Of a stretch of DNA of 64,000 nucleotides, positions 13,717-64,000 are shown piece after piece. This stretch comes from Malacoraja senta (Eukaryota): the NCBI GenBank assembly GCA_038087875.1, contig JAXLNO010000796.1, forward strand, positions 124,001 through 188,000, given 5' to 3'. Every line of letters starts with the position of its first letter. The stretch's first letter is position 1. Below the pieces are notes generated by a model. That model had not been told where the DNA came from. It made no database searches and saw nothing but the letters and a program-made list of their open reading frames with translations. Both the position numbers and the translations under genes were made by a program.

Positions 13717-15089
13717 CTGGCAAGATATGTATATGATGTTTGAGAGGCTTTTAGATCGACAAACTGATCTGCAGGAAATAGAGGGATATGGATCATGTTG
13801 CAGTTGGATGGGATCAGTTTAGCATCTCATCATGTTCACCACAGACATTGTGGGCCAAAGGGCCTCTTCCTGAGATGAACATTTTTATGTTTTATATAAA
13901 ATAAGATTAGTAATCAGCTGTAAGCCCCCTTGAACAGACTGCATCATTCAATAACATTATGTCCAATCTGATTTTGATCAGTTTACTGCATAATTCCTGC
14001 AATTTTTGATTCATTTCTGATCTAAAATTCTCTATATCTCAACCTAGAAAATATTCATTCACCTTGTCTTCACAGCTGGAATAGAAAGTTCAGGCAAATC
14101 ATACACCTCCTGGAAAATAAATCTTCTTCGTAACTATTTTAAAGAGGGACCCAACATGGGAGGACTGCTGAGAACAAAGATAACAAAGAGGGTCCCGGGG
14201 TTGGGGGGGGAGGGGGCGCGGATAACACAGGTGAACCCAACATGGAGGGGCTGCCGAGAACAAAGAGGGACCATTGGGGACTGTAATGATTACTTTGTAA
14301 CTGTGTCGACACCCTATACATGGTGACTTGTGTATGTATACCTTGTGTATGTTATGCAAAGCAAAGAATTTCACTGTGACATGTCACATGTGATAATAAA
14401 GTATCAATCAATCAAATAGGCGACCTTTTATTCCAAAATGTGGCGCAATGTATGACTTTGGAATCACAGGGTAACTGCAGTGAAGACAGCATTTGAAAAA
14501 TTAATGGCTGAATGTAAAGTCATCAGTCAGCATTGATACAATAAAGAGCATAGAACAGTACAGCACAAGAACAGGCCCTTTGACCCACAATGTTTGTGCC
14601 GAACATGATGCCAAGACCAATTGTTATCTGCTTGCACATAATCCATATCCATCCATTCCCTGCATATACATGTGCCTATCTAAAAGTCTCTTAAATGCCA
14701 CTATCATATCTGCTTCCACCACCACCTCCAGCAGCACATTCCAGTCACTCACCACCCTTGGCGTAAAACACTTGTCCTGCACATCTTTTTTTAACTTTGC
14801 CACTCATTGTAAAGCAATACCTGCTCTTATTTGATATTTCCTTCCTGGGTAAAAAGTCTGATGGTCTACCCTATCTCTACTCCTCCCAGTTTGATATATT
14901 ACTGTCAGGTCTCCCCTCAATCCCCGACATTCCAGAGAAAACAATCCAACTGTCCAGTCTGTCCAACTTCTCCCTGTGGCTAATACCCCACTAATCCAGG
15001 CATCATTCCGGTAGACCTCCTCTGCATCCCAAAGGAAGCTGATTGTGCTTCATGGTCCTCTCCTGGTCTCTGCTGTTGTCAGCTGGTAC

Positions 15090-15223
15090 CTGTTCATTGA
15101 AAGGTTTTCTCTTTTTCCTCTTCTTCCAGCAACCAATTCCAAGGATGATCCCCAGGAGAATGAGAGGAACAATTACAGCTCCAGTCACGATCCTAATCTT
15201 CATATCTTCTTTCACTGCCCTCT
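15090..15223 (-). CDS. MHC class I-like exon 5, connecting peptide, transmembrane and start of cytoplasmic tail
   Basis: Acceptor CAACAG in phase 1, then (E)RAVKEDMKIRIVTGAVIVPLILLGIILGIGCWKKRKKRKPFNEQ. Hydrophobic span followed by a KKRKKRK stop-transfer cluster. Possible donor GTACCA after 15090, otherwise read-through to TGA at 15003-15005. Confidence 0.8.
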
Positions 15224-15540
15224 CTGTTGGCATATACAGTGGCTTGCAAAAGTATTCATACCCCTTGAACTTTTCCACATTTTGTCACGTTACAACCACA
15301 AGCGTAAATGTATTTTATTGGGATTTTATGTGATAGACCAACATAAAGTGGCACATAATTGTGAAGTGGAAGGAAAATTATACATGGTTTTCAAATTTTT
15401 TTACAAATAAAAAACTGAAAAGTGTCGCGTGCGAAAATATTCAGCCCCCTTTACTCTGATACCCCTAAATAAAATCCAGTGCAACCAATTGCCTTCAGAA
15501 GTCACCTTATTAGTAAATAGAGTCCACTTGTGTGTAATCT

Positions 15541-15883
15541 CGGGACGACAGATGGCGCAATGGGCTAAGTGTTCGGCTGGCAACCGGAAGGTAGCCGGTT
15601 CGAATCCCGCTTGGAGTGCATACTGTCGTTGTGTCCTTGGGCAAGACACTTCACCCACCTTTGCCTGCGTGTGAATGTGTGTGAGTGATTGGTGGTGGTC
15701 GGAGGGGCCGTAGGCGCAGATTAGCAGCCACGCTTCCGTCAGTCTGCCCCAGGGCAGCTGTGGCTACAGAAGTAGCTCACCACCACCGAGTGTGACTGAG
15801 GAGTGAATGAATAATGCGATGTAAAGCGCCGAGTATTAGAAAGGCGCTATATAAATCCCATCCATTATTATTATTATTATTAT
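15541..15883 (+). mobile_element. tRNA-derived CORE-SINE (AFC-like) inserted in the Tc1 5-prime region
   Basis: A box TGGCGCAATGG, B box GGTTCGAATCC, CORE-like GTGTCCTTGGGCAAGACACTTCACC and an (ATT)n tail. TSD TAATCT at 15535-40 and 15884-89. Confidence 0.85.
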
Positions 15884-15964
15884 TAATCTAATCTCAGTAT
15901 AAATACAGCTGTTCTGTGAAGGCCTCAGAGGTTTGTTAGAGAACATTAGTGAACAAACAACATC

Positions 15965-16986
15965 ATGAAGCCAAAGGAACACACCAGACAGGTCAGGGAT
16001 AAAGTTGTGGAGAAGTTTAAAACAGGGTTAGGTTATAAATAAATATCCCAAGCTTTGAACATCTCACGGAGCACTGTTCAATCCCTCATCCGAAAATGGA
16101 AAGAGTATGGCACAACTGCAAACCTACCAAGACATGGCCGTCCACCTAAACTGACAGGCCGGGCAAGGAGAGCATTGATCAGAGAAGCAGCCAAGAGGCC
16201 CATGGTAACTCTGCAGGAGCTGCAGAGATCCACAGCTCAGGTGGGAGAATCTGTCCACAGGAAAACTATTAGTCGTGCACTCCACAAATCGGGCCTTTAT
16301 GGAAGAGTGGCAAGAAGAAAGCCATTGTTGAAAAAAGCCCATAAGAAGTCCCGTTTGCAGTTTGCCACAAGCCATGTGGGGGACACAGCAAACATGTGGA
16401 GGAAGGTGCTCTGGTCAGATGAGACCAAAATTGAAGTTTTTGGCCTAAATGCAAAACGCTATGTGTGGCGGAAACCTAACACTGCACATCACCCTGAACA
16501 CACCATCCCCACTGTGAAACATGGTGGTGGCAGCATTATGCTGTGGGGATGCTTTTCTTCAGCAGGGACAGGGAAGCTGGTCAGAGTTGATGGGGGAAGA
16601 TGGATGGAGCCAAATACAGGGCAATCTTGGAAGAAAACCTGTTAGAGTCTGCAAAAGACTTGAGACCGGGGCGGAAGTTCACCTTCCAGCAGGACAACGA
16701 CCCTAAACATACAGCCAGAGCTACAATGGAATGGTTTAGATCAAAGCGTATTCATGTGTTAGAATGGCCCAGTCAAAGTCCAGACCTAAATCCAATTGAG
16801 AATCTCTGGCAAGACTTGAAAATTGCTGTTCACAGATGCTCTCCATCCAATCTGACTGAGCTTGAGCTATTTTGCAAAGAAGAATGGGCAAAAATTTCAG
16901 TCTCTAGATGTGCAAAGCTGGTAGAGATATACCCCAAAAGACTTGCAGCTGTAATTGCAGCGAAAGGTGGTTCTACAAAGTATTGA
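15965..16986 (+). pseudogene. Tc1 DD34E transposase, inactivated
   Basis: MKPKEHTRQVRDKVVEKF start, GRPPKL AT-hook, WSDE, QQDND and PIEN with 34 residues between the second D and E. TAA at 16040-16042 and a frameshift in the G-run near 16590. Confidence 0.95.
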
Positions 16987-18349
16987 CTCAGGGGGGCTGA
17001 ATACTTTTGCACGCGACACTTTTCAGTTTTTTATTTGTAACAAAATTTGAAAACCATGTATCATTTTCCTTCCACTTCACAATTATGCACCACTTTGTGT
17101 TGGTCTATCACATAAAATCCCAATAAAATACATTTACGTTTGTGGTTGTAACGTGACAAAATGTGGAAAAGTTCAAGGGGTATGAAAACTTTTGCAAGCC
17201 ACTGTATAGTGCATTTTAAACATTTAGTGATCAATAACAACATTGTAATGATTTTATTATCTAAATTAAAGTAGCACTGTTCATATCTAATTAAAAAGTA
17301 ATAACGTTTTAGATTTAAGTATTTATACAGAGGATGGATGTGCTTAAAATGATCAATGAAAAATCATTAAGTTCATATTAGCATTGAGGTATTGAGATTT
17401 TATCTGCAGCATTTAATTAAGAATTTAAAGAATCAAGTACGTCAGAAATATATGACTATTTACAGTGTAGAGGTCAACAAGGCCATTTTCTTATGTTGAT
17501 GATTGTTATTATAGCAAATAAAAGTGAACCCATTTATAGTTGATAAAACTTCAAAGGTTTTAATCTTTGCTGATATTTCAATGATATCTGAGTTTAATTT
17601 TCTCACATACACATGCTCTCTCTTTCTCTCTCTCTCCCCCTCACTGTCTCACACACATGAGCCCACACACACACACATAGGCACACACAGACATTAACAC
17701 TACTGTCTATTTGTACTGACCAGCAATCTTAACCATGTCAGCTTGGCCCTGGTGTGAAGATCTTTGCAGAGGTCTTGTCTGGAACAAATAAGTCAGCTAC
17801 AGAACAGGTGCTGCTACTTCAGCCTGATAATATGGCACCACTATTGGTCTTTTGTGTAACTAGCTACTATCAGAAAATTAGCTAGATGCCCAAGGAAGAA
17901 GATAAGAGACCTTGTCCAGGATCAGCCTATCTTGCTTCCACTGTTCCTACATTTGGATGGGTGAGTTAAGGGTGACATAAGAATAATTTTGACCATAAGA
18001 TATTGGAGCGGAATTATGCCTTTCAAGTCCATTGAGTCTACTCCACCATTCAGTCATAGCAGATCTATTTTTTACCGCTAAATCCCATTCTCTAGCCTTC
18101 TCCCTGTAACCTTTGTCACCCGTACTCATCAAGAACCTATCAATCTCTGCTTGAAAAATATGCAATGACTTGACCCACACAGCTGTTTGTATCAATGAAT
18201 TCCACAGATTCACCACCCTGTGACTAAAGAGATTCCTCCTCATCTCCATATTGAAGGTAGGTATTTTTATTGTGAGGCTGTGCTAGACTCTCCCATTACT
18301 GAAAACTTCCTTTCCCATCAACTAACCAGGCATTTCATTATCTGGTAGG

Positions 18350-23063: not shown

Positions 23064-23336
23064 CCTGTGGAACATTGACTCCCTGCAGCAGAGTTGCATG
23101 TTCGATGTAACAGGAGAATTTTGCCACATCTTCTCTATTCAGTTGAATTGTATTCTTCAGCTGGTAAGTCCCATCCCAATTGGGCAACAGATCACTGGAT
23201 TCAGACTCATGGACCCCCTCACCATCTCTCAGCCACGTTACATCGATGGCCCGTGGCTAGAAGCCTGTGACAAGGCAGGAGAGTCTCAGTGATTGCGACC
23301 CATCACGTTTAATCCCAATAAACACCTCAGGGGTTT
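23064..23336 (-). CDS. MHC class I-like exon 4, alpha3 C1-set Ig domain with premature TAG
   Basis: Acceptor CTTGCAG, donor GTAAGT, 273 bp. (E)TPEVFIGIKRDGSQSLRLSCLVTGF*PRAIDVTWLRDGEGVHESESSDLLPNWDGTYQLKNTIQLNREDVAKFSCYIEHATLLQGVNVPQ. The stop replaces the Tyr of the GFYP motif, which is why the ORF track misses this exon. Confidence 0.92.
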
Positions 23337-24532: not shown

Positions 24533-24808
24533 CTCTCCTCTGTAGTGCTTCTTGTCCACACTCCAGATATATCCGCAGCCACTTCACACAGTCCTTCTCC
24601 AGGAGATCTTTAAAATACTTGTTCATGAAGGTGTTGACGTTCCACCGATCTGCTAGCATCTGGAAATCTGGACGTAGTGCAATCCAGCGCATTCTGTCCT
24701 TGTCAAAAGCACAGGCATCCTCCCCATCATAACCCAGTCTGACAAACCCATCAGTGGAATTGTCACTGTCCACTTCACAGCCGCAGAAACCCTGCACAAA
24801 GCAAACAG
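24533..24808 (-). CDS. MHC class I-like exon 3, alpha2 domain
   Basis: Pyrimidine-rich tract plus CCCCAG acceptor, weak GTACAC donor, 276 bp (canonical alpha2 exon size). (T)VCFVQGFCGCEVDSDNSTDGFVRLGYDGEDACAFDKDRMRWIALRPDFQMLADRWNVNTFMNKYFKDLLEKDCVKWLRIYLECGQEALQRR has QxxxGC, YDGxD and CxxWLxxYL. Confidence 0.95.
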
Positions 24809-25869
24809 CTGGGGCTGAGGTAGGGGTGGAGGATTTGTGTTGGGGAGAGTGGATGGAAGGGAGAGGCAATTTACAAATCAGTTCTCAGCATGGTACAAAC
24901 AGGCATAACAGAACACAACATGGAGCTGTACAGCACAGGAGCAGGTTTAGCTCAGAGATACAGCGCGGAAACAGGCCCTTCGGCCCACCGAGTCCGCACC
25001 GACCAGTGGTCCCCGCATATTAACACTATCCTACACAGACTACTTTTCTTTTCCAGCTTTCTCCACTCTACCCCATCACTCTAAATGGTCCTGGTCTCAT
25101 ATGTTTTCTGTCCATTTTTCCACAGCATGCTGCCTGACTCGTTGAGTTCCTCCTGTTTGTTTTAAATTCAGATTGGCAGCATCTGCAGTTTGCTGTGACT
25201 CCATCTTAGCACAATGGATGATCAATGTGGATTCAGTGAGCAGAAGGGCCGGTTTCCATGATGTGTGACTCAATGACCCATGGTCTATATACTGAGGGCA
25301 TGGACTAACCTCAAGTGTTATGGGGGGGGAGCTTTACTGTTGCGGATGTAACACTAAAGGAGTTCTGCTGTGTCAGAAGGGTGGAACTCAGATTCTGCAC
25401 TGTCGTACATAAAGAACAGAGGAAGAAGTGCATTGTCAGATGGGCAATGCTACAGAGCCAACAGGTCAGTCTGAAGGTTAAGGCAATGCAGATGGGAAGT
25501 ACATCAAGGCTGTTGCACTGTGTGGGATTGCTACACCCTCTGAGGATTGTTGCCAATATTGAGGGGATGCTGGATTAACACAATATTATTACTGAGGGAA
25601 TACCTCATAGTCACCATCAACCAGCTTAAATCAAGATCCCATCTCTAGATGATCAGGCTATAAATAAACTAATGGTTTCTCCCTCATTCCAGCCCAACAA
25701 AACAGATGATCCAATCCATCCACTTATTACTGGTGTTGAATATCAAATGCTTAACCCATAAAGAGACTATCACCAGCCAACTGTTATGACTGTGTGTTCA
25801 GCAGTTAGGACACATTAAATATAGACGATGGGCCGTGTCTCTATCAAAATGTTATGGAGTAAATGTCTG

Positions 25870-26490
25870 AAACAGCATCAATGGTGCTGAAGTGAAAAAG
25901 GTTGAGAGTTTCTGGTTCCCCTACTGCCTCAGGAGACTAAGGAAATGCGGCATCTCCAATGACTCTTACAAACTTCTACAAATGTGCCATAGAAAGCATA
26001 CTGACAGGTTGCATCACAACTTAGTTTGGAAAGAGTTCTGCCCAAGACCGCTGGAAATTGCAGAGAGGTGGAGATGTAGCACAGTCGATCACACAAACAT
26101 GATTCCCCACCAGTGAATCCATCTGTATTTCAACTGGTTCAGGAAAGCAGACAACATAATCAAAGATTTGTCCCGTTCTGGTCACTCCTTCTTCCTGCAG
26201 AAGGTACGTAAGCATTAAAGCGTGCACCACCAGACTCAGTAACTGTTTCCTCCCCTATGTTATCAGGTTTCTGAACAGTCCTCCCTTATGCTAGGGTTCA
26301 CCTCAACCCCATTGTAGACACTGGACTTTGTCTCTGGCACTGGTACATTACAATGCTGAGAACTACATTCTGCACTCTTTGCTCTACCTATTGTACGAGT
26401 TTGGTTTGATTGTATTTATGAATAGTTTTCTTTGATGTGATTGACTAACGCAAAAAAAGTGTATCAGAGAATCATGTGTCAACAATAAAA
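25870..26490 (+). mobile_element. Rex1/Babar-type LINE 3-prime fragment in class I intron 2
   Basis: Degenerate CLRRLRKCG...TNFYKCAIESILTGCIT motif and a CAATAAA-microsatellite tail. Confidence 0.65.
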
Positions 26491-26553
26491 CTAAAACAAA
26501 ATCCATCTGTGTCATCACTGAGTGTCTACCCCAGGTCCGCTCACGACACTTAC

Positions 26554-26814
26554 TCGAGATACCATGTTGCTGTTGGTAGACTATCTCAGCATTTCCTCTG
26601 ACAATCCCATGAAAACCTGCAACTGTGATGGCCATTGAATCCCAGTGATCCTGCGGGAAAGACTGGGCCATCCATCGCTGTCTGGGAACAGCCCGCTCTA
26701 GTGTGCTGTCAAAATATGCTATCTGGACGTCATCCAGCATTGCTACCATACTGTACTCAGGCAGCTCATTCAATCCATGGTTCAACAGGTAGTAAAATGC
26801 AAGATGGTGTAAAT
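26554..26814 (-). CDS. MHC class I-like exon 2, alpha1 domain
   Basis: Acceptor TTGCAG, donor GTAAGT, 261 bp. (D)LHHLAFYYLLNHGLNELPEYSMVAMLDDVQIAYFDSTLERAVPRQRWMAQSFPQDHWDSMAITVAGFHGIVRGNAEIVYQQQHGIS carries the class I hallmarks H3, D29-D30, FDS, PRxxWM and W60. Confidence 0.93.
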
Positions 26815-30752: not shown

Positions 30753-30804
30753 CAGAGGAGACAGTGGCCACACCGTAAGTGTTCAGTAAGGTAAAAAGAA
30801 GCAT
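30753..30804 (-). CDS. MHC class I-like exon 1, signal peptide MLLFTLLNTYGVATVSS(D)
   Basis: ATG at 30804-30802, 17 codons plus 1 nt, then donor GTAAGC. Hydrophobic leader ending in small residues. Phase 1 joins the alpha1 exon (G+AT = Asp). Lies directly downstream of the X2/Y promoter module. Confidence 0.8.
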
Positions 30805-30907
30805 GTTTAACAGCCGCCCACAGCACTATTTAACCAGCAGAGTAAATGCAGCAACAGTAACATAATCTCTTGTACGTTTTTAACAGAACTCTGGTGTGAA
30901 GGTAATT

Positions 30908-47313: not shown

Positions 47314-48375
47314 ATGAGGGCCAGGGCAGTTTACTGTTTAGGATGTCAGATGTATTGTATCCAGGGTAAGGGGAGTATGAGGGCCAGGGCAGTTTGTTGT
47401 TCTGGATGTCAGATGTATTGTATCCAGGGTAAGGGGATTATGAGGGCCAGGGCAGTTTACTGTTCTGGATGTCAGATGTGGGAAGTCATGGAGTCTGATA
47501 GCCCTCCAGACGTCCACATCTGCGCCAGGTGTATCGAGATGGGGCTCCTAGTGGACGGTATTAGGAACCTGGAGCAGCAGCTCGATGACCTCCGTCTGGT
47601 CAGGGAGAGCGAGGAAGTCATTGAGAGGAGTTACAGGGATGTGGTCACTCCAACACCACAGGAGGCAGGCAAGTGGATCACGGTTGGGAGAGGCAAGGGG
47701 CACAGGCAGGGACTAGAGAGTACCCCGGTGGCTGTACACCTTGACAATAAGTACTCCTGTTTGAGCACTGTTGGGGTGGACAGCCTACCTGGGGGTAGCG
47801 ACAGCGGCCGGGCCTCCGGTATAGAGACCGGTCCTGTTGCTCAGAAGGGCAAGGAAAAGAAGAGGAGGGCAATATTAATAGGGGACTCTATAGTTAGGGG
47901 GTCAGACAGGCGATTCTGTGGACGCAGTCGGGAGACCCGGATGGTAGTTTGTCTCCCTGGCGCCAGGGTCTGTGATGTGTCTCAACGTGTCCAAGACACC
48001 CTGAAAGGGCAGGGAGAGGAGCCCGAGGTCGTGATACATATAGGTACCAATGACATAGGTAAAAAAAGAGAAGAGGTCCTGAAAGGAGAATTTAGGGAGT
48101 TAGGAGGGGAGTTAAAGAGAAGGACAGCAAAGGTAACAATCTCGGGATTACTGCCTGTACCACGCGACAGTGAGAGTAGGAATGGAGCGAGGTGGAGGAT
48201 AAATGCGTGGCTGAAGGACTGGTGCAGAAGGCAGGGATTCAAATTTCTGGATCATTGGGACCTCTTTTGTGGAAGGTTCGACCTGTACAAAAAGGATGGG
48301 TTGCACTTGAACCTGAGGGGGACCGATATCCTGGCGGGGAGATCTGCAAAGGCTACTGGGGAGACTTTAATCTAG
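47314..48375 (+). CDS. CR1 ORF1p: zinc finger/coiled coil plus SGNH esterase
   Basis: CSGCQMWE...HICARC, heptad LRNLEQQLDDL-like segment, IGDSIVRG, HIGTNDI and DGLHLN (SGNH blocks I, III, V). 353 aa. Confidence 0.93.
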   Translation: MRARAVYCLGCQMYCIQGKGSMRARAVCCSGCQMYCIQGKGIMRARAVYCSGCQMWEVMESDSPPDVHICARCIEMGLLVDGIRNLEQQLDDLRLVRESEEVIERSYRDVVTPTPQEAGKWITVGRGKGHRQGLESTPVAVHLDNKYSCLSTVGVDSLPGGSDSGRASGIETGPVAQKGKEKKRRAILIGDSIVRGSDRRFCGRSRETRMVVCLPGARVCDVSQRVQDTLKGQGEEPEVVIHIGTNDIGKKREEVLKGEFRELGGELKRRTAKVTISGLLPVPRDSESRNGARWRINAWLKDWCRRQGFKFLDHWDLFCGRFDLYKKDGLHLNLRGTDILAGRSAKATGETLI

Positions 48376-48554
48376 AATGGTTGGGGGGAGGGACTCAAAT
48401 AGAGAATGCTATTAGACAGTGTGTGAGGCAGGAGGCAGAGAAGGAAAGCACTCAGACCCAACATGTAGGGGGGAAAGAAGAAAACAATAATAAACAGAGA
48501 ATAAGAGGTGGTGGGGTTCTTAAATGGGTGAGCAGAGAAACAGAGGGGTGTAAA

Positions 48555-51509
48555 ATGCGGGCGGAAGCAATAGGTAGCAAGGTGAAAGGTAAAAGTGGCA
48601 GGCAGACAAATCCAGGGCAAAAATCAAAAAGAGCCACTTTTCAACATAATTGTATAAGGGGTAAGAGCGTTGTAAAAACAAGCCTGAAGGCTTTGTGTCT
48701 CAATGCAAGGAGCATTCGTAATAAGGTGGATGAGTTGAATGTGCAGATAGCAATTAATGATTATGATATAGTTGGGATCACGGAGACATGGCTCCAAGGT
48801 GACCAAGGCTGGGAGCTGAACATCCAGGGATATTCAATATTCAGGAGGGATAGAGAGAAAGGAAAAGGAGGTGGGGTAGCGTTGCTGGTTAGAGAGGAGA
48901 TTAACGCAGTGGAAAGTAAGGACATTAGCTTGGAGGATGTGGAATCGGTATGGGTAGAGCTGCGAAACACTAAGGGGCATAAAACGCTGGTGGGTGTTGT
49001 GTACAGGCCACCTAGCAGTAGTAGTGAAGTTGGGGATGGCATCAAACAGGAAATTAGAAATGCGTGCAACAAAGGCAAAACAGTTATAATGGGTGACTTC
49101 AATCTACATATAGATTGGGTGAATCAAATTGGCAGGGGTGCTGAGGAAGAGGATTTCTTGGAATGTATGAGGGATAGTTATCTAAACCAACATGTAGAGG
49201 AACCAACGAGAGAGCAGGCTATTCTAGACTGGGTATTGAGTAATGAGGAAGGGTTAGTTAGCAGACTTGTTGTGCGTGCCCCCTTGGGCAAGAGTGATCA
49301 TAATATGGTTGAGTTCTTCATTAGGATGGAGAGTGACATTGTTAATTCAGAAACAACGGTTCTGAACTTAAAGAAAGGTAACTTTGAGGGTATGAGACGT
49401 GAATTGGCCAAGATTGACTGGCAATTAGTTCTAAAAGGGCTGACGGTGGATATGCAATGGAAGGCATTTAAAGACTGCATGGATGAACTACAAAAATTGT
49501 TCATCCCAGTTTGGCAAAAGAATAAATCAAGGAAGGTAGTGCATCCGTGGATAACAAGGGAAATCAGGGATAGTATCAAAGCAAAAGATGATGCGTACAA
49601 ATTAGCCAGAAAAAGCAGCATACCAGAGGACTGGGAGAAATTCAGAGACAAGCAGAGGAGGACAAAGGGCTTAATTAGGAAAGGGAAAATAGATTATGAA
49701 AGGAAACTGGCAGGGAACATAAAAACTGACTGCAAAAGTTTTTATAGATATGTGAAGAGAAAGAGATTAGTTAAATCAAATGTAGGTCCCTTGCAGTCAG
49801 AAACAGGTGAATTGATCATGGGGAACAAGGATATGGCAGACCAATTGAATAACTACTTTGGTTCCGTCTTCACTAAGGAAGACATAAATAATCTGCCGGA
49901 AATAGCAGGGGGCCGCGGGTCAAAGGAGATGGAGGAACTGAGTGAAATCCAGGTTAGTCGGGAAGTGGTGTTGGGTAAATTGAATGGATTAAAGGCCGAT
50001 AAATCACCAGGGCCAGATAGGCTGCATCCCAGAGTACTTAAGGAAGTAGCTCCAGAAATAGTGGATGCATTAGTGATAATTTTTCAAAACTCTTTAGATT
50101 CTGGAGTAGTTCCTGAGGATTGGAGGGTAGCAAACGTAACCCCACTTTTTAAGAAGGGAGGGAGAGAGAAAACGGGGAATTACAGACCAGTTAGTCTAAC
50201 ATCGGTAGTGGGGAAACTGCTAGAGTCAGTTATTAAAGATGGGATAGCAGCACATTTGGAAAGTGGTGAAATCATTGGACAAAGTCAGCATGGATTTACG
50301 AAAGGTAAATCGTGTCTGACGAATCTTATAGAATTTTTCGAGGATGTAACTAGTAGAGTGGATAGGGGAGAACCAGTGGATGTGTTGTATCTGGACTTTC
50401 AGAAGGCTTTCGACAAGGTACCACATAAGAGATTAGGATACAAACTTAAATCACACGGTATTGGGGGTTCAGTATTGATGTGGATAGAGAACTGGCTGGC
50501 AAACAGGAAGCAAAGAGTAGGAGTAAACGGGTCCTTTTCACAATGGCAGGCAGTGACTAGTGGGGTACCGCAAGGCTCAGTGCTGGGACCCCAGCTATTT
50601 ACAATTTATATTAATGATCTGGACGAGGGAATTGAAAGCAACATCTCCAAGTTTGCGGATGACACTAAGCTGGGGGGCAGTGTTAGCTGTGAGGAGGATG
50701 CTAGGAGACTGCAAGGTGACTTGGATAGGCTGGGTGAGTGGGCAAATGTTTGGCAGATGCAGTATAATGTGGATAAATGTGAGGTTATCCACTTTGGTAG
50801 CAAAAACGGGAAGGCAGACTATTATCTAAATGGTGGCCGATTAGGAAATAGGGAGATGCAGCGAGACCTGGGTGTCATGGTACACCAGTCATTGAAAGTA
50901 GGCATGCAGGTGCAGCAGGCAGTGAAGAAAGCGAATGGTATGTTGGCCTTCATAGCAAGAGGATTTGAGTATAGGAGCAGGGAGGTTCTACTGCAGTTGT
51001 ACAGGGTCTTGGTGAGACCACACCTGGAGTATTGCGTACAGTTTTGGTCTCCAAATCTGAGGAAGGACATTATAGCCATAGAGGGAGTGCAGAGAAGGTT
51101 CACCAGACTGATTCCTGGGATGTCAGGACTTTCATATGAAGAAAGACTGGATAGACTTGGCTTATACTCGCTAGAATTTAGGAGATTGAGAGGGGATCTT
51201 ATAGAAACGTACAAAATTCTTATGGGGTTGGACAGGCTAGATGCAGGAAGATTGTTCCCGATGTTGGGGAAGTCCAGGACAAGGGGTCACAGCTTAAGGA
51301 TAAGGGGGAAATCCTTTAAGACCGAGATGAGGAAAAACTTTTTCACACAGAGAGTGGTGAATCTCTGGAACTCTCTGCCACAGAGGGTAGTTGAGGCCAG
51401 TTCATTGGCTATATTTAAGAGGGAATTAGATGTGGCCCTTGTGGCTAAAGGGATCAGGGGTATGGAGAGAAGGCAGGTACGGGATACTGAGTTGGATGAT
51501 CAGCCATGA
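48555..51509 (+). CDS. CR1 ORF2p: APE endonuclease plus reverse transcriptase (first ATG 48555; frame open from at least 48192)
   Basis: LNARS, GITETW, GDFN, SDH (APE); [31 protein letters not shown] (RT). A 1-nt shorter G-run near 51455 alters the last residues relative to GYGEKAGTGY in other copies. Confidence 0.95.
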   Translation: MRAEAIGSKVKGKSGRQTNPGQKSKRATFQHNCIRGKSVVKTSLKALCLNARSIRNKVDELNVQIAINDYDIVGITETWLQGDQGWELNIQGYSIFRRDREKGKGGGVALLVREEINAVESKDISLEDVESVWVELRNTKGHKTLVGVVYRPPSSSSEVGDGIKQEIRNACNKGKTVIMGDFNLHIDWVNQIGRGAEEEDFLECMRDSYLNQHVEEPTREQAILDWVLSNEEGLVSRLVVRAPLGKSDHNMVEFFIRMESDIVNSETTVLNLKKGNFEGMRRELAKIDWQLVLKGLTVDMQWKAFKDCMDELQKLFIPVWQKNKSRKVVHPWITREIRDSIKAKDDAYKLARKSSIPEDWEKFRDKQRRTKGLIRKGKIDYERKLAGNIKTDCKSFYRYVKRKRLVKSNVGPLQSETGELIMGNKDMADQLNNYFGSVFTKEDINNLPEIAGGRGSKEMEELSEIQVSREVVLGKLNGLKADKSPGPDRLHPRVLKEVAPEIVDALVIIFQNSLDSGVVPEDWRVANVTPLFKKGGREKTGNYRPVSLTSVVGKLLESVIKDGIAAHLESGEIIGQSQHGFTKGKSCLTNLIEFFEDVTSRVDRGEPVDVLYLDFQKAFDKVPHKRLGYKLKSHGIGGSVLMWIENWLANRKQRVGVNGSFSQWQAVTSGVPQGSVLGPQLFTIYINDLDEGIESNISKFADDTKLGGSVSCEEDARRLQGDLDRLGEWANVWQMQYNVDKCEVIHFGSKNGKADYYLNGGRLGNREMQRDLGVMVHQSLKVGMQVQQAVKKANGMLAFIARGFEYRSREVLLQLYRVLVRPHLEYCVQFWSPNLRKDIIAIEGVQRRFTRLIPGMSGLSYEERLDRLGLYSLEFRRLRGDLIETYKILMGLDRLDAGRLFPMLGKSRTRGHSLRIRGKSFKTEMRKNFFTQRVVNLWNSLPQRVVEASSLAIFKRELDVALVAKGIRGMERRQVRDTELDDQP

Positions 51510-51620
51510 TCGTATTGAATGGCGGTGCAGGCTCGAAGGGCCGAATGGCCTACTCCTGCACCTATTTTCTATGTATCTATGTATCTATGTAATCACGTGG
51601 ATGTCAAATCAGGTGAGTTT

Positions 51621-53408
51621 TAGATACATAGATACATAGAAATTAGGTGCAGGAGTAGGCCATTCGGCCCTTCGAGCCTGCACCGCCATTCAATACGATC
51701 ATGGCTGATCATCCAACTCAGTATCCCGTACCTGCCTTCTCTCCATACCCCCTGATCCCTTTAGCCACAAGGGCCACATCTAATTCCCTCTTAAACATAG
51801 CCAATGAACTGGCCTCAACTACCCTCTGTGGCAGAGAGTTCCAGAGATTCACCACTCTCTGTGTGAAAAAGTTTTTCCTCATCTCGGTCTTAAAGGATTT
51901 TCCCCTTATCCTTAAGCTGTGACCCCTTGTCCTGGACTTCCCCAACATCGGGAACAATCTTCCTGCATCTAGCCTGTCCAACCCCATAAGAATCTTGTAC
52001 GTTTCTATAAGATCCCCTCTCAATCTCCTAAATTCTAGCGAGTATAAGCCAAGTCTATCCAGTCTTTCTTCATATGAAAGTCCTGACATCCCAGGAATCA
52101 GTCTGGTGAACCTTCTCTGCACTCCCTCTATGGCTATAATGTCCTTCCTCAGATTTGGAGACCAAAACTGTACGCAATACTCCAGGTGTGGTCTCACCAA
52201 GACCCTGTACAACTGCAGTAGAACCTCACTGCTCCTATACTCAAATCCTCTTGCTATGAAGGCCAACATACCATTCGCTTTCTTCACTGCCTGCTGCACC
52301 TGCATGCCTACTTTCAATGACTGGTGTACCATGACACCCAGGTCTCGCTGCATCTCCCCATTTCCTAATCGGCCACCATTTAGATAATAGTCTGCCTTCC
52401 CGTTTTTGCTACCAAAGTGGATAACCTCACATTTATCCACATTATACTGCATCTGCCAAACATTTGCCCACTCACCCAGCCTATCCAAGTCACCTTGCAG
52501 TCTCCTAGCATCCTCCTCACAGCTAACACTGCCCCCCAGCTTAGTGTCATCCGCAAACTTGGAGATGTTGCTTTCAATTCCCTCGTCCAGATCATTAATA
52601 TAAATTGTAAATAGCTGGGGTCCCAGCACTGAGCCTTGTGGTACCCCACTAGTCACTGTCTGCCATTGTGAAAAGGACCCGTTTACTCCTACTCTTTGCT
52701 TCCTGTTTGCCAGCCAGTTCTCTATCCACATCAATACTGAACCCCCAATACCGTGTGATTTAAGTTTGTATCCTAATCTCTTATGTGGTACCTTGTCGAA
52801 AGCCTTCTGAAAGTCCAGATACAACACATCCACTGGTTCTCCCCTATCCACTCTACTAGTTACATCCTCGAAAAATTCTATAAGATTCGTCAGACACGAT
52901 TTACCTTTCGTAAATCCATGCTGACTTTGTCCAATGATTTCACCACTTTCCAAATGTGCTGCTATCCCATCTTTAATAACTGACTCTAGCAGTTTCCCCA
53001 CTACCGATGTTAGACTAACTGGTCTGTAATTCCCCGTTTTCTCTCTCCCTCCCTTCTTAAAAAGTGGGGTTACGTTTGCTACCCTCCAATCCTCAGGAAC
53101 TACTCCAGAATCTAAAGAGTTTTGAAAAATTATCACTAATGCATCCACTATTTCTGGAGCTACTTCCTTAAGTACTCTGGGATGCAGCCTATCTGGCCCT
53201 GGTGATTTATCGGCCTTTAATCCATTCAATTTACCCAACACCACTTCCCGACTAACCTGGATTTCACTCAGTTCCTCCATCTCCTTTGACCCGCGGCCCC
53301 CTGCTATTTCCGGCAGATTATTTATGTCTTCCTTAGTGAAGACGGAACCAAAGTAGTTATTCAATTGGTCTGCCATATCCTTGTTCCCCATGATCAATTC
53401 ACCTGTTT
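51621..53408 (-). mobile_element. 5-prime-truncated CR1 copy nearly identical to 49801-51591, tail-to-tail
   Basis: The 586-aa ORF is identical to the ORF2 RT half except for four substitutions and the C-terminus. Confidence 0.96.
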
Positions 53409-54119
53409 TCCTCACCAGAAGGGCATTGTGATCCAGGTGGGTTTGCCAGCAATCTGGTGCCTTCACAGTCAACATCATTGAATCTGGAACTTAATACATG
53501 AATTAATTATTCATTTTTATTTCAATTCCCCAGATTCCAAAGCAGGATTTGGATTCATATTTCCAGATGGAGAATCAAGCCCTCTTCATATTGAATCACC
53601 AGAACTCGTCACTGTCGTCTCTATAGTCTCTCTATTAGTTTCTCATTGAGCTGTGCTTTCCCAAGGTAATACTCTTTGCAAACTGGTGGATAAATTGCTC
53701 CCAGTGTCTCAGTAAACAAATATGCATGTGGAATGGCCACAATTTTTGTGTGTCCGATCCAGAAAATACATGCCCTTTCTGCAAGCACAATCTACACCCA
53801 GAAATGCTTGGTCACGTTAGCGGAGTGGCACAAATAGACCCGTAAACTGTTATAATTCTGTTCAATCCTGACAAATGGTTTTATAAAATGTGAAAGTGCT
53901 CAGGAATATGATAGATTTTCTAAATACAATCTGCTTGATCATTGATCATTAATCTCCGAATTGTATACGGGCTATGAAAATATAAACAAATTCGGCTGGA
54001 GATGGCAAGGGAAGCTACAGTATGTGTCCATACTGCAGCATGTGGGAGTTAGTGATCAGTGCAACTCTCTTCGGGATGTCCATGTCTGCATGAAAGGATT
54101 CTGCCTTCAATCACTTGGG

Positions 54120-56505
54120 CTCTACATCAGTGATGTACTCAACTACTTACAATATATATTCATGATTTAGATGATGGAATTAAAAGTAACACTAGCAAAT
54201 TTGCAGATGACACAAAGCTGGGTGGTAGTATGAACTGCGAAGAGGATGTTACAGGTTGAGTGAGTGGCAGATGCATGGCAGATGCAGTATAATGTAGATA
54301 AATGTGAGAGTATCCAATATGGTGGCGAGAACAAGGAGGCAGATTATTATCTCAATGGTGTCAGATTAGGAAAAAGAGAAGCGCAATGAGACATGGGTGT
54401 CCTTGTACACCAGTCAATGAAAGTAGACATGCAGGTACAGCAGGCAGTGAAGAAAGCTAATGGCATGTTGGCCTTCATAATGAGAAGATTTGAGTAGAGG
54501 AGTAAAGAGTTCCTTCTGCAGTTTTGTTTCCACAGTCTAAAAATAAAGGGGAGGCCATTTAAAACTGAGATGAGAAAAAACTTTTTCACCTAGAGAGTTG
54601 TGAATCTGTGGAATTCTCTGCCACTGAAGGCATTGGAGGTCAATTCACTGGACGTTTTCAAGAGAGAGTTAGATTTAGCTCTTTTTGCTAATGGAATCAA
54701 GGGGAATGGGGAGAAAGCAGGAACGTGGTACTGATTCTGGATGATCAGACATGATCATATTGAATGGCAGTGCTGGCTCGAAGGGCCGAATGGCCTACTC
54801 CTGCACCTATGTTCTATGTTTCTATGAATGTGGGATTCAGGCAACGGACACAGCAGCAGTGTGGAGCGGCCGGGAATTTTGGGATTCCCGTTAGGATTTC
54901 AGTCACAGAAGACAGTAGATGCCATTTTACTGGATGAATTTCAAAGAGAGTTAGATAGAGCTCTAGGGGCTAGCGGAATCAAGGGGTATGGGGAGAAGGC
55001 AGGCACAGGCTACTGCTAAAAATAAAAAATTATGGGATTGGGGGTAATATATTAGCATGGGTAGAGGATTGGCTAACAAATAGGAAGCAGAGAGTGGGGA
55101 TAAATGGTTCATACTCGGGATGGCAACCGGTAACTAGCGGGGTTCCGCAAGGGTCGGTGCTGGGACCCCAGTTGTTCACAATTTATATAAATGATTTGGA
55201 GGAGGGAACCAAGTGTAATATATCAAAATTTGCGGACGATACAAAAATGGGAGGAAAAGTAGGGGATGAGGAGGATAGGAAGAGTCTGCAAAAGGATATA
55301 GATAAGCTAGGTGAGTGGGCAACAACTTGGCAGATGAAATTTAATACTAATAAATGTGAAGTCATTCACTTTGGGAAAAAAAATGATAGGGCAAGTTATT
55401 TTCTAAATGAGGTGGAGCTGCGTTGTAATGCAACACAAAGGGATCTTGGGGTAGTAGTACATGAATCACTAAAAGTTAGTATGCTGGTGCAGCAAGCAAT
55501 CAGGAAGGCCAATGGAGTTTTGGCCTTTATTGCTAGGGGGATTGAGTATAAAAACACGGAGGTCTTGCTGCAGCTGTACACAGTATTAGTGAGACCACAT
55601 TTGGAATACTGTGTACAGTTCTGGGGTCCATACTTAAGAAAGGATGTACTGGCCCTGGAGGCAGTGCAGCGAAGGTTTACAAGATTAATTCCTGCAATGA
55701 GGGGATTGACATATGAGGAAAGTAGGCTGGAACTCTACTCTTTGGAGTTTAGAAGAATGAGAGGCGATCTCATTGAAACATATAAGATCGTGAGGGGCCT
55801 TGATCGGGTGGATGCACCGAGGATGTTCCCAATGATCGGGGAAACTAGAACTAGGGGACATAGTTGTAGAATAAGAGGGGGCTCTTTTAAAACTGAGATG
55901 AGGAAGAACTTCTTCACCCAGAGGGTGGTTAATTTATGGAATTCACTGCCCCAGGGAGCAGTGGAAGCAGAAACATTAAATATATTTAAGTCTAAAATAG
56001 ATGGTTTTTTAGCTGCCAAGGTGGTTAAGGGGCTACGGGGAGAGGGCAGGGATATGGACCTAGGTATGGTTAGTATAGTAAGACCTGAGTGATCTCCTGG
56101 ACAAGTGTCGATCGCCTGGATTGGGGTCGGAGAGGAATTTCCCGGATTTTTTTCCCGAATTGGACCTGGGTTTTTATCCGTTTTTTTGCCTCCCCCAGGA
56201 GATCACGCGGTTCTTGGGGTGGAGAGGGGTGATAGCGATATAAAGGGGAGGGTAGTGTCTTGTGTTCTGTGTCTTGTGTCTACTGTTTGTGGGTAAGGGT
56301 GTCTGTTTAGTGTTCAGCCATGAGCGAATGGCGGTGCGGGCTCGATGGGCCTGGTGGTCTACTCTCGCACCTACTTTCTATGTTTCTATGTCTATGTTAC
56401 TGATTGTGGATGATCAGCCATGATCACAATGAATGGCGGTGCTGGCTCGAAGGACCAAATGGCCTACTCCTGCACCTATTGTCTATGTTTCTCTGTTTCT
56501 ATGTC
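54120..56505 (+). mobile_element. Stack of CR1 3-prime fragments (54120-54825; 54905-55017 plus 56398-56505 split by 55020-56397)
   Basis: RT and C-terminal motifs. The 332-aa ORF 55094-56092 belongs to a different subfamily. TACTG is duplicated at the nested junctions. Confidence 0.88.
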
Positions 56506-63697: not shown

Positions 63698-64000
63698 GTA
63701 AGTGCTTTCTCTTCACCGGTCACAACCACGTTGCTTTACTTTATCATTGTCCGTGTAAACCCACACCCCATTGTCAATCTCTCTTTCCTCTCCAAGTCCC
63801 ACAAAACCACCCATCCTTGCTGGAGCTCCATTTCTGAGCCTCTCCCATTAGCTCCCTCCCTCCCCTTCCCCTGCACCAACATGGTCCTTTTCAAAGTCAG
63901 AAATGGCCCCCGGTGAGTAGTGTGACATAGTTGTCCACACCATCCTCCCCAACATCTCCCCACCACAGTCCAGGTAGGTGGAACTGCCCTTGACTTATAG

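What the first reader, a model, noticed from the sequence alone, without database searches (positions are those of the whole stretch)
24533..26814. Class I-like molecule with a strongly hydrophobic, CD1/EPCR-like groove in a cartilaginous fish
Seen (manual alignment to HLA numbering): most peptide-terminus anchors are lost (Y7>F, Y59>H, R/Y84>Q, Y123>A, T143>L, K146>R, Y159>L; only W147 and Y171 kept). Groove-facing positions are almost all hydrophobic: floor F7, Y9, M24, A34, V95, G97, C99, V114, L116; alpha1 helix M63, V67, F70, I73, V74, I80, V81; alpha2 helix L143, W147, M152, F156, L159. The beta2m contacts Q96, D119-G120-D122, P235 and Q242 are kept. Established: loss of these anchors defines non-classical class I, and hydrophobic grooves are the hallmark of lipid binders (CD1, EPCR/PROCR). 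Inference: a lipid or hydrophobic-ligand class I lineage. It may belong to a described chondrichthyan lineage (from memory, UFA is reported as CD1-like) or be a new one.
Basis: partly seen in the sequence, partly recalled or inferred. Interest (0 to 1): 0.85.

Follow-up and report, generated by a model that had tools for sequence, protein, structure and literature searches.

The report
Dead skate copy of UGA-sister gene

Summary
On the minus strand lies one five-exon class I gene: leader, alpha1, alpha2, alpha3 and a TM/tail exon. Seven of nine peptide-terminus anchors are replaced. Of 35 pocket positions, 25 are hydrophobic and two are charged. Groove hydropathy is about 3 SD above 121 other class I domains, while non-groove positions are ordinary.

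The gene is not classical UAA. It is also not UFA (PDB 8GM8 lineage) or UGA (PDB 9CH4 lineage). It belongs to a one-gene-per-species lineage found in rays and sharks, which RefSeq calls "MR1-like". This lineage is the well-supported sister of UGA and lies about 42 kb from a UGA gene in the little skate. All 14 members share the same anchors and a nearly identical groove. The modelled platform is closest to shark UGA, then MR1 and bird and fish class I. No CD1 appears in the top 50. The tail lacks UGA's tyrosine sorting motif.

This copy is broken. TAC became TAG at the GFYP tyrosine of alpha3, and a Tc1 sits 11 nt before the last exon's acceptor. Both are absent from the little skate.

Lipid or hydrophobic-ligand binding is inferred, not shown.

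This scan had already noted the TAG and the Tc1 in this window, and UGA genes elsewhere in this genome.

The parts
30753..30804 (-). Leader exon, ATG at 30804-30802, encoding MLLFTLLNTYGVATVSS plus one base (phase 1), with donor G|GTAAGC
   Evidence: Sequence read. The peptide is identical in the orthologous Leucoraja erinacea locus, with 2 synonymous changes. A window-only upstream ATG (30863-30861) is AAG in L. erinacea.
26554..26814 (-). Alpha1 exon, acceptor ttgcag|AT, donor A|GTAAGT. An alternative weaker donor after 26563 is possible.
   Evidence: It is 94-95% identical to L. erinacea XP_055486430.1. It matches Pfam MHC_I. Its best PDB hit is 9ch4_A at E 2.9e-22.
24533..24814 (-). Alpha2 exon, acceptor cctcag|CC as in the L. 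erinacea RefSeq model (alternative at 24808), donor AGA G|gtacac. It holds the C101-C164 pair, the conserved unpaired C99, and the N-S-T glycosylation site.
   Evidence: Pfam MHC_I at 1.9e-16.
23064..23336 (-). Alpha3 (Ig C1-set) exon, otherwise intact, with an in-frame TAG at 23257-23259 that replaces the Tyr of the GFYP motif
   Evidence: L. erinacea and Pristis have TAC at this codon. All 13 orthologues have Y. The TAG is present without variation in contigs of two DNA runs of organism A.
15004..15223 (-). Last exon: connecting peptide, TM helix and cytoplasmic tail, with stop TGA at 15006-15004. The frame is open and there is no YxxPhi motif.
   Evidence: tblastn with P0001, P0151, P0152 and P0154. 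Sequence read. Tails compared.
15237..17204 (.). Tc1-type transposon inserted at a TA 11 nt upstream of the last exon's acceptor AG, flanked by a TA duplication. It displaces the branch-point region.
   Evidence: The insertion is absent from the collinear L. erinacea locus.

Best explanation
The window holds the skate orthologue of a single-copy, MHC-linked, non-classical class I lineage shared by rays and sharks. RefSeq labels the lineage 'MR1-like'. It arose by duplication from the ancestor of UGA before rays and sharks split.

Inferred working of intact orthologues: the heavy chain pairs with beta2-microglobulin, since the contact residues are kept. It sits in the membrane by one helix. Its groove has lost the hydrogen-bonding anchors for peptide ends and is lined almost wholly by conserved hydrophobic side chains over a floor of small residues (A34, A45, G97, C99, A123). 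It would therefore hold one conserved lipid or other hydrophobic ligand for an invariant receptor. Because the tail has no tyrosine sorting signal, loading would occur in the secretory pathway or at the cell surface rather than in endosomes.

In this genome the copy is disabled. A TAC>TAG change truncates alpha3 195 nt before the last exon junction, so nonsense-mediated decay is expected. A Tc1 element has also landed in the 3' splice region of the last intron.

Shown: the gene model, the lineage placement, the residue pattern and both lesions. Inferred: ligand class, beta2m pairing, trafficking and loss of function.
For: Gene model and lesions.

Orthology: 92-95% protein identity to L. erinacea XP_055486430.1, in a collinear locus with 87-91% nucleotide identity.

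Lineage spread: one gene per species in 13 ray and shark species at 54-72% identity, with the next-best hits at 33-36%.

Tree: IQ-TREE gives the lineage 100/100, UGA 100/100, and the two together 98/93. Rays and sharks occur in each clade.

Lineage names: the PDB title of 9CH4 names UGA and that of 8GM8 names UFA.

Linkage: a UGA gene lies on the same L. erinacea contig about 42 kb downstream. The Pristis orthologue has the coordinates of LOC127585976, which Verissimo et al. 2023 mark as 'MHC-Ib'.

Groove: 24-25 of 35 positions are hydrophobic and 2 are charged. The anchors are invariant across the lineage. The window matches L. erinacea at 35 of 35 positions. The floor side-chain volume is the smallest of the shark, ray and bony-fish lineages compared (1825 vs ~1995 A^3 in UAA, and close to the CD1b reference at 1838).

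Model: pLDDT 93.5, with 9CH4 as best match (Z 25.2, rmsd 1.7).

Literature: UFA and UGA are reported to bind CD1d-type lipids (PMC12562908).
Against: No ligand, cavity volume or beta2m complex was computed or measured, because the tools give no model coordinates. A hydrophobic lining also fits a closed groove or very hydrophobic peptides.

No RNA-seq run was listed, so expression and splicing are unverified.

The two DNA runs that carry the TAG may come from the assembled individual, so the stop could be one allele.

dN/dS against L. erinacea is 0.65. Amino-acid changes seem evenly split between the two branches when I compared them by eye with Pristis and other orthologues. There is thus no sign of long decay, and all groove residues are intact.

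I could not place published UDA, UCA or UEA reference sequences in the tree, because those papers are not held.
Confidence: 0.8

Rival explanations
1. It is a member of an already named CD1-like lineage, UFA or UGA proper.
For: 9CH4 (UGA) is the best sequence and structure match. A UGA gene lies next to the orthologue in L. erinacea. Specialists might treat the two clades as one lineage with sublineages.
Against: Both clades have 100/100 support and each contains rays and sharks, so they are ancient paralogues. Identity to UGA is only 36-42%. UGA's YxxI/V tail is absent. Groove residues differ at positions 7, 59, 63, 67, 80, 81, 99, 143, 146 and 167. UFA (the 8GM8 lineage) is a separate clade at 19-27% identity.
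Confidence: 0.1
2. The gene is functional in this species. The TAG would then be an assembly error or a segregating null allele, and the Tc1 would be tolerated.
For: All five exons are otherwise open, splice sites are present, and all 35 groove residues are unchanged from L. erinacea. Amino-acid change on this branch does not look faster than on the L. erinacea branch. Contigs of related species appear to carry two unlisted differences in 23238-23267. That is exactly where L. erinacea differs, at TAC and CAG. This is a weak inference.
Against: The TAG is read without any alternative in contigs of two runs from two samples. The Tc1 with its target-site duplication and a window-only upstream ATG are further changes in the same direction.
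Confidence: 0.15
3. The lineage does not present lipids. Its hydrophobic residues would close the groove (as in FcRn or HFE), or bind hydrophobic peptides or lipopeptides, or bind a small metabolite as MR1 does.
For: The modelled backbone resembles MR1, classical class I and chicken YF1*7.1 more than CD1, and no CD1 is in the top 50. The whole alpha1/alpha2 domain is conserved (77%), not only the groove at 84%, with permutation p about 0.06.
Against: The Lys43 equivalent of MR1 is Ala in HMMER's alignment to MR1 chains. The peptide-end anchors are gone. Small floor residues argue for more space rather than less. The sister lineage UGA is reported as a lipid binder. YF1*7.1, a good structural match, itself binds acylated ligands according to its PDB titles.
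Confidence: 0.25
4. The stop produces a useful alpha3-less, EPCR-like soluble or re-spliced product. This is the idea in the scan's note s1-140556.
For: The TAG is in frame and the downstream exons are open.
Against: The stop lies in the middle of the Ig domain, after the first Cys, so the truncated product would have half a domain and no membrane anchor. It sits 195 nt before the last junction, which is the context for nonsense-mediated decay by established rules. Skipping alpha3 (273 nt) would keep the frame, but nothing supports that it happens. Every orthologue keeps Tyr at this codon.
Confidence: 0.03

Closest known systems
Shark/ray UGA (PDB 9CH4, 'shark nonclassical MHC class I, UGA')
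   Same: It is the sister clade (98/93 support), it is adjacent in the skate genome, and it is the best sequence and structure match (Z 25.2, rmsd 1.7). The two share L5, Y9, F70, G97, A123, W147, M152, Y155, F156, L159, L160, D163 and Y171. Both occur in rays and sharks.
   Different: Identity is only 36-42%. The groove here is far more hydrophobic (KD 1.48 vs 0.57). It has F7, H59, M63, C99, L143 and R146 where UGA has Y7, Y59, F99, F143 and K146, with position 63 variable in UGA. There is no YxxI/V sorting tail and no N86 glycosylation site. It is strictly one gene per species, whereas Pristis and Pristiophorus each have three UGA genes.
Shark/ray UFA (PDB 8GM8)
   Same: Both are non-classical, MHC-linked lineages that lack the peptide anchors and have a hydrophobic groove.
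   Different: UFA is a separate clade at 19-27% identity. It lacks the TxxKW region altogether and ends in a hydrophobic C-terminus without a tail. It is multicopy in rays.
CD1 (and EPCR)
   Same: Groove hydropathy and floor volume at aligned positions resemble lemur CD1b (1.43 vs 1.33; 1825 vs 1838 A^3).
   Different: Identity is 19% and CD1 does not group with this lineage in the tree; it could serve only as the outgroup. No CD1 is in the top 50 structural matches. The tail has no endosomal motif. Unlike EPCR, it has an alpha3 domain with beta2m contact residues.
MR1 (the RefSeq label)
   Same: Alpha2 is about 38% identical and MR1 chains are strong fold matches.
   Different: The Schiff-base Lys43 equivalent is Ala. 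There is no orthology, since the gene groups with elasmobranch UGA.
Chicken YF1*7.1 (PDB 3P77, 9EB3, 9EB4)
   Same: It is a class I-shaped platform with a hydrophobic groove that holds acylated ligands, and it is among the best structural matches (Z 23.7-23.9).
   Different: Identity is 25-26%. It is a bird-specific lineage, so the likeness is an analogy only.

Membership tests
MHC class I superfamily (alpha1-alpha2 platform plus C1-set alpha3) | An MHC_I platform domain and an Ig C1-set domain, in the usual phase-1 exon structure | tested here: met
   Pfam PF00129 on alpha1 (below the curated cut-off on its own) and on alpha2 (1.9e-16), and PF07654 on alpha3. Phase-1 exons. AF2 platform model with pLDDT 93.5.
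Classical class I (UAA) | Conserved peptide-terminus anchors: Y7, Y59, R/Y84, T143, K146, W147, Y159, Y171 | tested here: not met
   Only W147 and Y171 are kept. Triakis UAA and ray UAA have 8-9 of 9.
Classical class I (UAA) | Clusters with Triakis scyllium UAA in a tree | tested here: not met
   It falls in a separate clade. The UAA group lies elsewhere.
UGA | Falls inside the clade that holds the 9CH4-type sequences | tested here: not met
   It is sister to that clade, not inside it. Both clades have 100/100 support.
UGA | Short tail with a conserved Tyr-x-x-Ile/Val motif | tested here: not met
   Eleven of the 14 UGA models inspected carry a D/A/E/G-Y-x-x-I/V motif at or near the end of the tail. 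No member of this lineage does, and the window's tail has no Tyr.
UFA | Falls inside the clade of 8GM8-type sequences | tested here: not met
   8GM8 is 52% identical to Cetorhinus P0021. That clade is separate.
UEA | Multicopy and sharks only (Almeida 2021, as cited in PMC10751288 and from memory of the abstract) | tested here: not met
   This lineage has one gene per species and occurs in five batoids including this skate. The shark-only multicopy clade is separate. My identification of that clade as UEA is an inference.
UDA | Keeps 8 of 9 peptide-terminus anchors (from my memory of the Almeida 2020 abstract; the paper is not held) | tested here: not met
   2 of 9 are kept. No named UDA sequence could be put in the tree.
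CD1 | Orthology or a CD1-type platform, an endosomal YxxPhi tail (most isoforms), and bound lipid | tested here: inconclusive
   Identity is 19%, no CD1 is in the top 50 fold matches, and there is no YxxPhi motif. Hydropathy is similar. Lipid binding cannot be tested with these tools.
MR1 | Lys43 for Schiff-base capture of ligand | tested here: not met
   The aligned residue is Ala in HMMER's alignment to MR1 chains.
EPCR | No alpha3 domain and no beta2m | tested here: not met
   An alpha3 exon is present with P235 and Q242, and the platform keeps Q96, D119, G120 and D122.

The most novel reading that the evidence does not exclude
The 'MR1-like' genes of RefSeq would form a third, so far unnamed, hydrophobic-groove class Ib lineage of elasmobranchs. 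It would be as old as the ray-shark split and be the sister of UGA. It has the greasiest groove of any class I lineage compared here and an invariant unpaired Cys99 on the groove floor. It has no endosomal sorting signal, so it would sample a different lipid pool from UGA, in the secretory pathway or at the surface. This skate has recently lost it.
Probability: 0.35. Interest if true: 0.7.

Novelty: new member of a known kind. Interest (0 to 1): 0.5.

Why it matters
Sharks and rays are the oldest living animals with an MHC. UFA and UGA are being put forward as evidence that lipid presentation of the CD1 type is as old as peptide presentation.

A further lineage that is single-copy, very conserved (about 77% identical in alpha1/alpha2 between rays and sharks) and even more hydrophobic, sitting beside UGA, would mean this ancient system already had several specialised members.

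Intact orthologues are available for expression and lipidomics, for example XP_055486430 and XP_051899694. Loss of the gene in one skate while a related skate keeps it offers a natural knockout for comparison.

For annotation, the RefSeq label 'MR1-like' is misleading.

Tried and rejected
1. Four paper searches aimed at the entry codes 9CH4 and 8GM8 or at a UFA/UGA paper or preprint found nothing useful. The lineage names came only from PDB titles in the fold searches.
2. The UDA and UEA papers (PMC7002201, PMC8454915, and the UEA paper's DOI) are not held. Their reference sequences could not be placed in the tree.
3. The supplement of Verissimo et al. 2023 labels genes only as 'MHC-Ib', with no lineage names.
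4. The runs returned for an RNA query behaved like DNA, with even intron coverage. No RNA-seq run was listed, so expression is not assessed.
5. The second read-laying run could not show the TAG codon in related species, because the contigs end within 30 nt of it.
6. Candidates with 8 of 9 anchors (P0003, P0013, P0014), which I took for possible UDA, turned out to be teleost proteins.
7. The AFDB cluster search gave only generic class I names.
8. tblastn with UGA, UFA, UAA and shark multicopy queries found no second class I gene in the window.
9. Cavity volume and a beta2m complex were not computed, because the tools return no coordinates.

Full report
**What is there.** The finding's coordinates span the alpha1 and alpha2 exons of one gene on the minus strand.
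- Reading the sequence and its splice sites, and mapping orthologous proteins by tblastn, gives five exons.
- They are: leader 30804-30753; alpha1 26814-26554 (strong GTAAGT donor, with a weaker alternative after 26563); alpha2 24814-24533; alpha3 23336-23064; and a last exon 15223-15004 that encodes the connecting peptide, TM helix, tail and stop.
- All junctions are phase 1, as in class I genes.
- Pfam gives MHC_I on alpha1 and alpha2 and C1-set on alpha3.
- tblastn with several class I lineages finds no second class I gene in the 64 kb. The rest of the window is LINE and Tc1 material.

**The observation.**
- I rebuilt HLA numbering from ungapped anchor segments and checked it against Triakis scyllium classical UAA (P0100; identified) in MAFFT alignments.
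- Of the nine peptide-terminus anchors only W147 and Y171 remain. The full set reads F7, H59, Q84, A123, L143, R146, W147, L159, Y171.
- At the 35 pocket positions of HLA-A2 (the Saper/Matsumura list, from established knowledge), 25 residues are hydrophobic. Only R146 and D163 are charged.
- Mean hydropathy is 1.43, against 0.18 +/- 0.41 for 121 other class I domains. Non-groove positions are ordinary at -0.71.
- The beta2m contact residues are present.

**Which gene it is.**
- An exhaustive HMMER search with alpha1 found one close relative, L. erinacea XP_055486430.1 (P0001, 'MR1-like, partial'), at 95% identity.
- Its locus is collinear with the window at 87-91% nucleotide identity. The window therefore comes from another skate, and the two genes are orthologues.
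- A search with P0001 found one gene per species in Pristis, Mobula, Hypanus, Pristiophorus, Heptranchias, Scyliorhinus, Stegostoma, Hemiscyllium, Mustelus, Cetorhinus and two Chiloscyllium species, at 54-72% identity. After these, identity drops to 33-36%.
- A careful IQ-TREE run on 68 sequences gives this clade 100/100 support, with rays and sharks as separate sub-clades.
- Its sister, at 98/93, is a second clade (100/100) that also holds rays and sharks. So the duplication is older than the ray-shark split.
- Fold searches supplied the names. 9CH4, the best match of my model, is titled 'shark nonclassical MHC class I, UGA'.
- 8GM8, which is 52% identical to a member of a third clade, is titled 'UFA'.
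- The window's lineage is therefore neither UFA nor UGA, nor the clade of Triakis UAA.
- It fails what is published for UEA (sharks only, multicopy) and what I recall for UDA (8 of 9 anchors kept). I could not place named UDA, UCA or UEA sequences, because those papers are not held.
- The gene is MHC-linked. In L. erinacea a UGA gene lies about 42 kb downstream on the same contig.
- The Pristis orthologue has the coordinates of LOC127585976, which Verissimo et al. 2023 mark as 'MHC-Ib'.

**Properties of the lineage.**
- The nine anchor positions are invariant in all 14 members, except W147L in four carpet-shark (orectolobiform) sequences.
- 21 of the 35 groove positions are invariant, and the window equals L. 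erinacea at all 35.
- Alpha1/alpha2 is about 77% identical on average across the lineage (75-77% between rays and sharks). The groove is at 84%, and 125 of 2000 random position sets reach that value.
- The floor residues are small (A34, A45, G97, C99, A123). Their summed volume is 1825 A^3 against about 1995 in UAA.
- Cys99 is conserved and has no obvious partner.
- The tail has no YxxPhi motif, whereas most UGA tails inspected (11 of 14) carry a D/A/E/G-Y-x-x-I/V motif.
- The Lys43 equivalent of MR1 is Ala, so the RefSeq name is only a similarity label.
- An AlphaFold2 model of the L. erinacea platform (pLDDT 93.5) matches 9CH4 best (Z 25.2, rmsd 1.7). Next come MR1, bird and fish class I and chicken YF1*7.1. 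No CD1 is in the top 50.

**State of this copy.**
- Alpha3 reads LSCLVTGF*PRAIDVTW. The codon is TAG where L. erinacea and Pristis have TAC and all orthologues have Tyr.
- Contigs of two DNA runs of the same organism carry the TAG with no alternative. They may come from the assembled animal.
- A 1.97-kb Tc1 with a TA duplication lies 11 nt upstream of the last exon's acceptor and is absent in L. erinacea.
- A window-only upstream ATG opens a short uORF.
- dN/dS against L. erinacea is 0.65 overall (alpha2 0.31, alpha3 0.78, TM/tail 1.4). Compared by eye with outgroup orthologues, the amino-acid changes are shared about equally by the two branches. The inactivation therefore looks recent, or the stop may still be polymorphic.

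**Function.** The lineage most likely presents or carries one conserved hydrophobic ligand. This rests on three things: the residue pattern, its conservation, and the review's statement that UFA and UGA bind CD1d-type lipids (PMC12562908). It is an inference. No cavity, ligand or beta2m complex was examined, and no expression data were obtained.

**Novelty.** The kind of molecule, a non-classical class I with a hydrophobic groove in elasmobranchs, is known. The genes are in RefSeq, and at least the sawfish one was counted as MHC-Ib in 2023. I could not find a name or description of this particular lineage. I file it as a new member of a known kind. There is a fair chance that it is an undescribed sister lineage of UGA.

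Noticed in passing
window 15237-17204: A Tc1-type element with a TA target-site duplication sits 11 nt from the acceptor of the class I gene's last exon. It is absent from the L. erinacea orthologous locus, so the insertion is younger than the split of the two skates.
   Followed up: partly
window 30861-30863: An upstream ATG opens a leader-like 18-codon uORF that ends 2 nt before the real start codon. The same codon is AAG in L. erinacea.
   Followed up: partly
L001 (L. erinacea), RefSeq model XP_055486430.1: The RefSeq model reads 12 codons into the intron after alpha2 (GTRPRHSDWWNG) and lacks the leader exon, which lies about 9.9 kb upstream of the model's start. In the window the same read-through hits a TGA.
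   Followed up: partly
P0164 (L. erinacea XP_055486496.1, another contig): This is a second 'MR1-like' model of the same lineage in the little skate. Its product includes sequence matching the window's intron 2 (25503-25574). It could be a haplotig, a duplicate or a mis-spliced model.
   Followed up: no
window 63944-63994, minus strand: There is a weak 17-residue likeness to the end of an alpha2 domain at the window's edge (E 0.69), with a stop just upstream. It is probably chance.
   Followed up: partly
window 23238-23267 in runs X4-X6: Contigs of related species all break in this 30-nt stretch. Their counts of unlisted differences fit the two differences that L. erinacea has there (TAC and CAG). 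This hints that the relatives keep the Tyr codon.
   Followed up: partly
UFA clade, proteins P0290-P0304: UFA-type genes are multicopy in rays, with at least six RefSeq proteins each in Mobula birostris and Hemitrygon akajei. They end in a hydrophobic C-terminus with no cytoplasmic tail.
   Followed up: no
window 47314-56092: Several long LINE reverse-transcriptase ORFs lie here, one of 1105 aa. Near-identical copies on both strands suggest recent activity.
   Followed up: no
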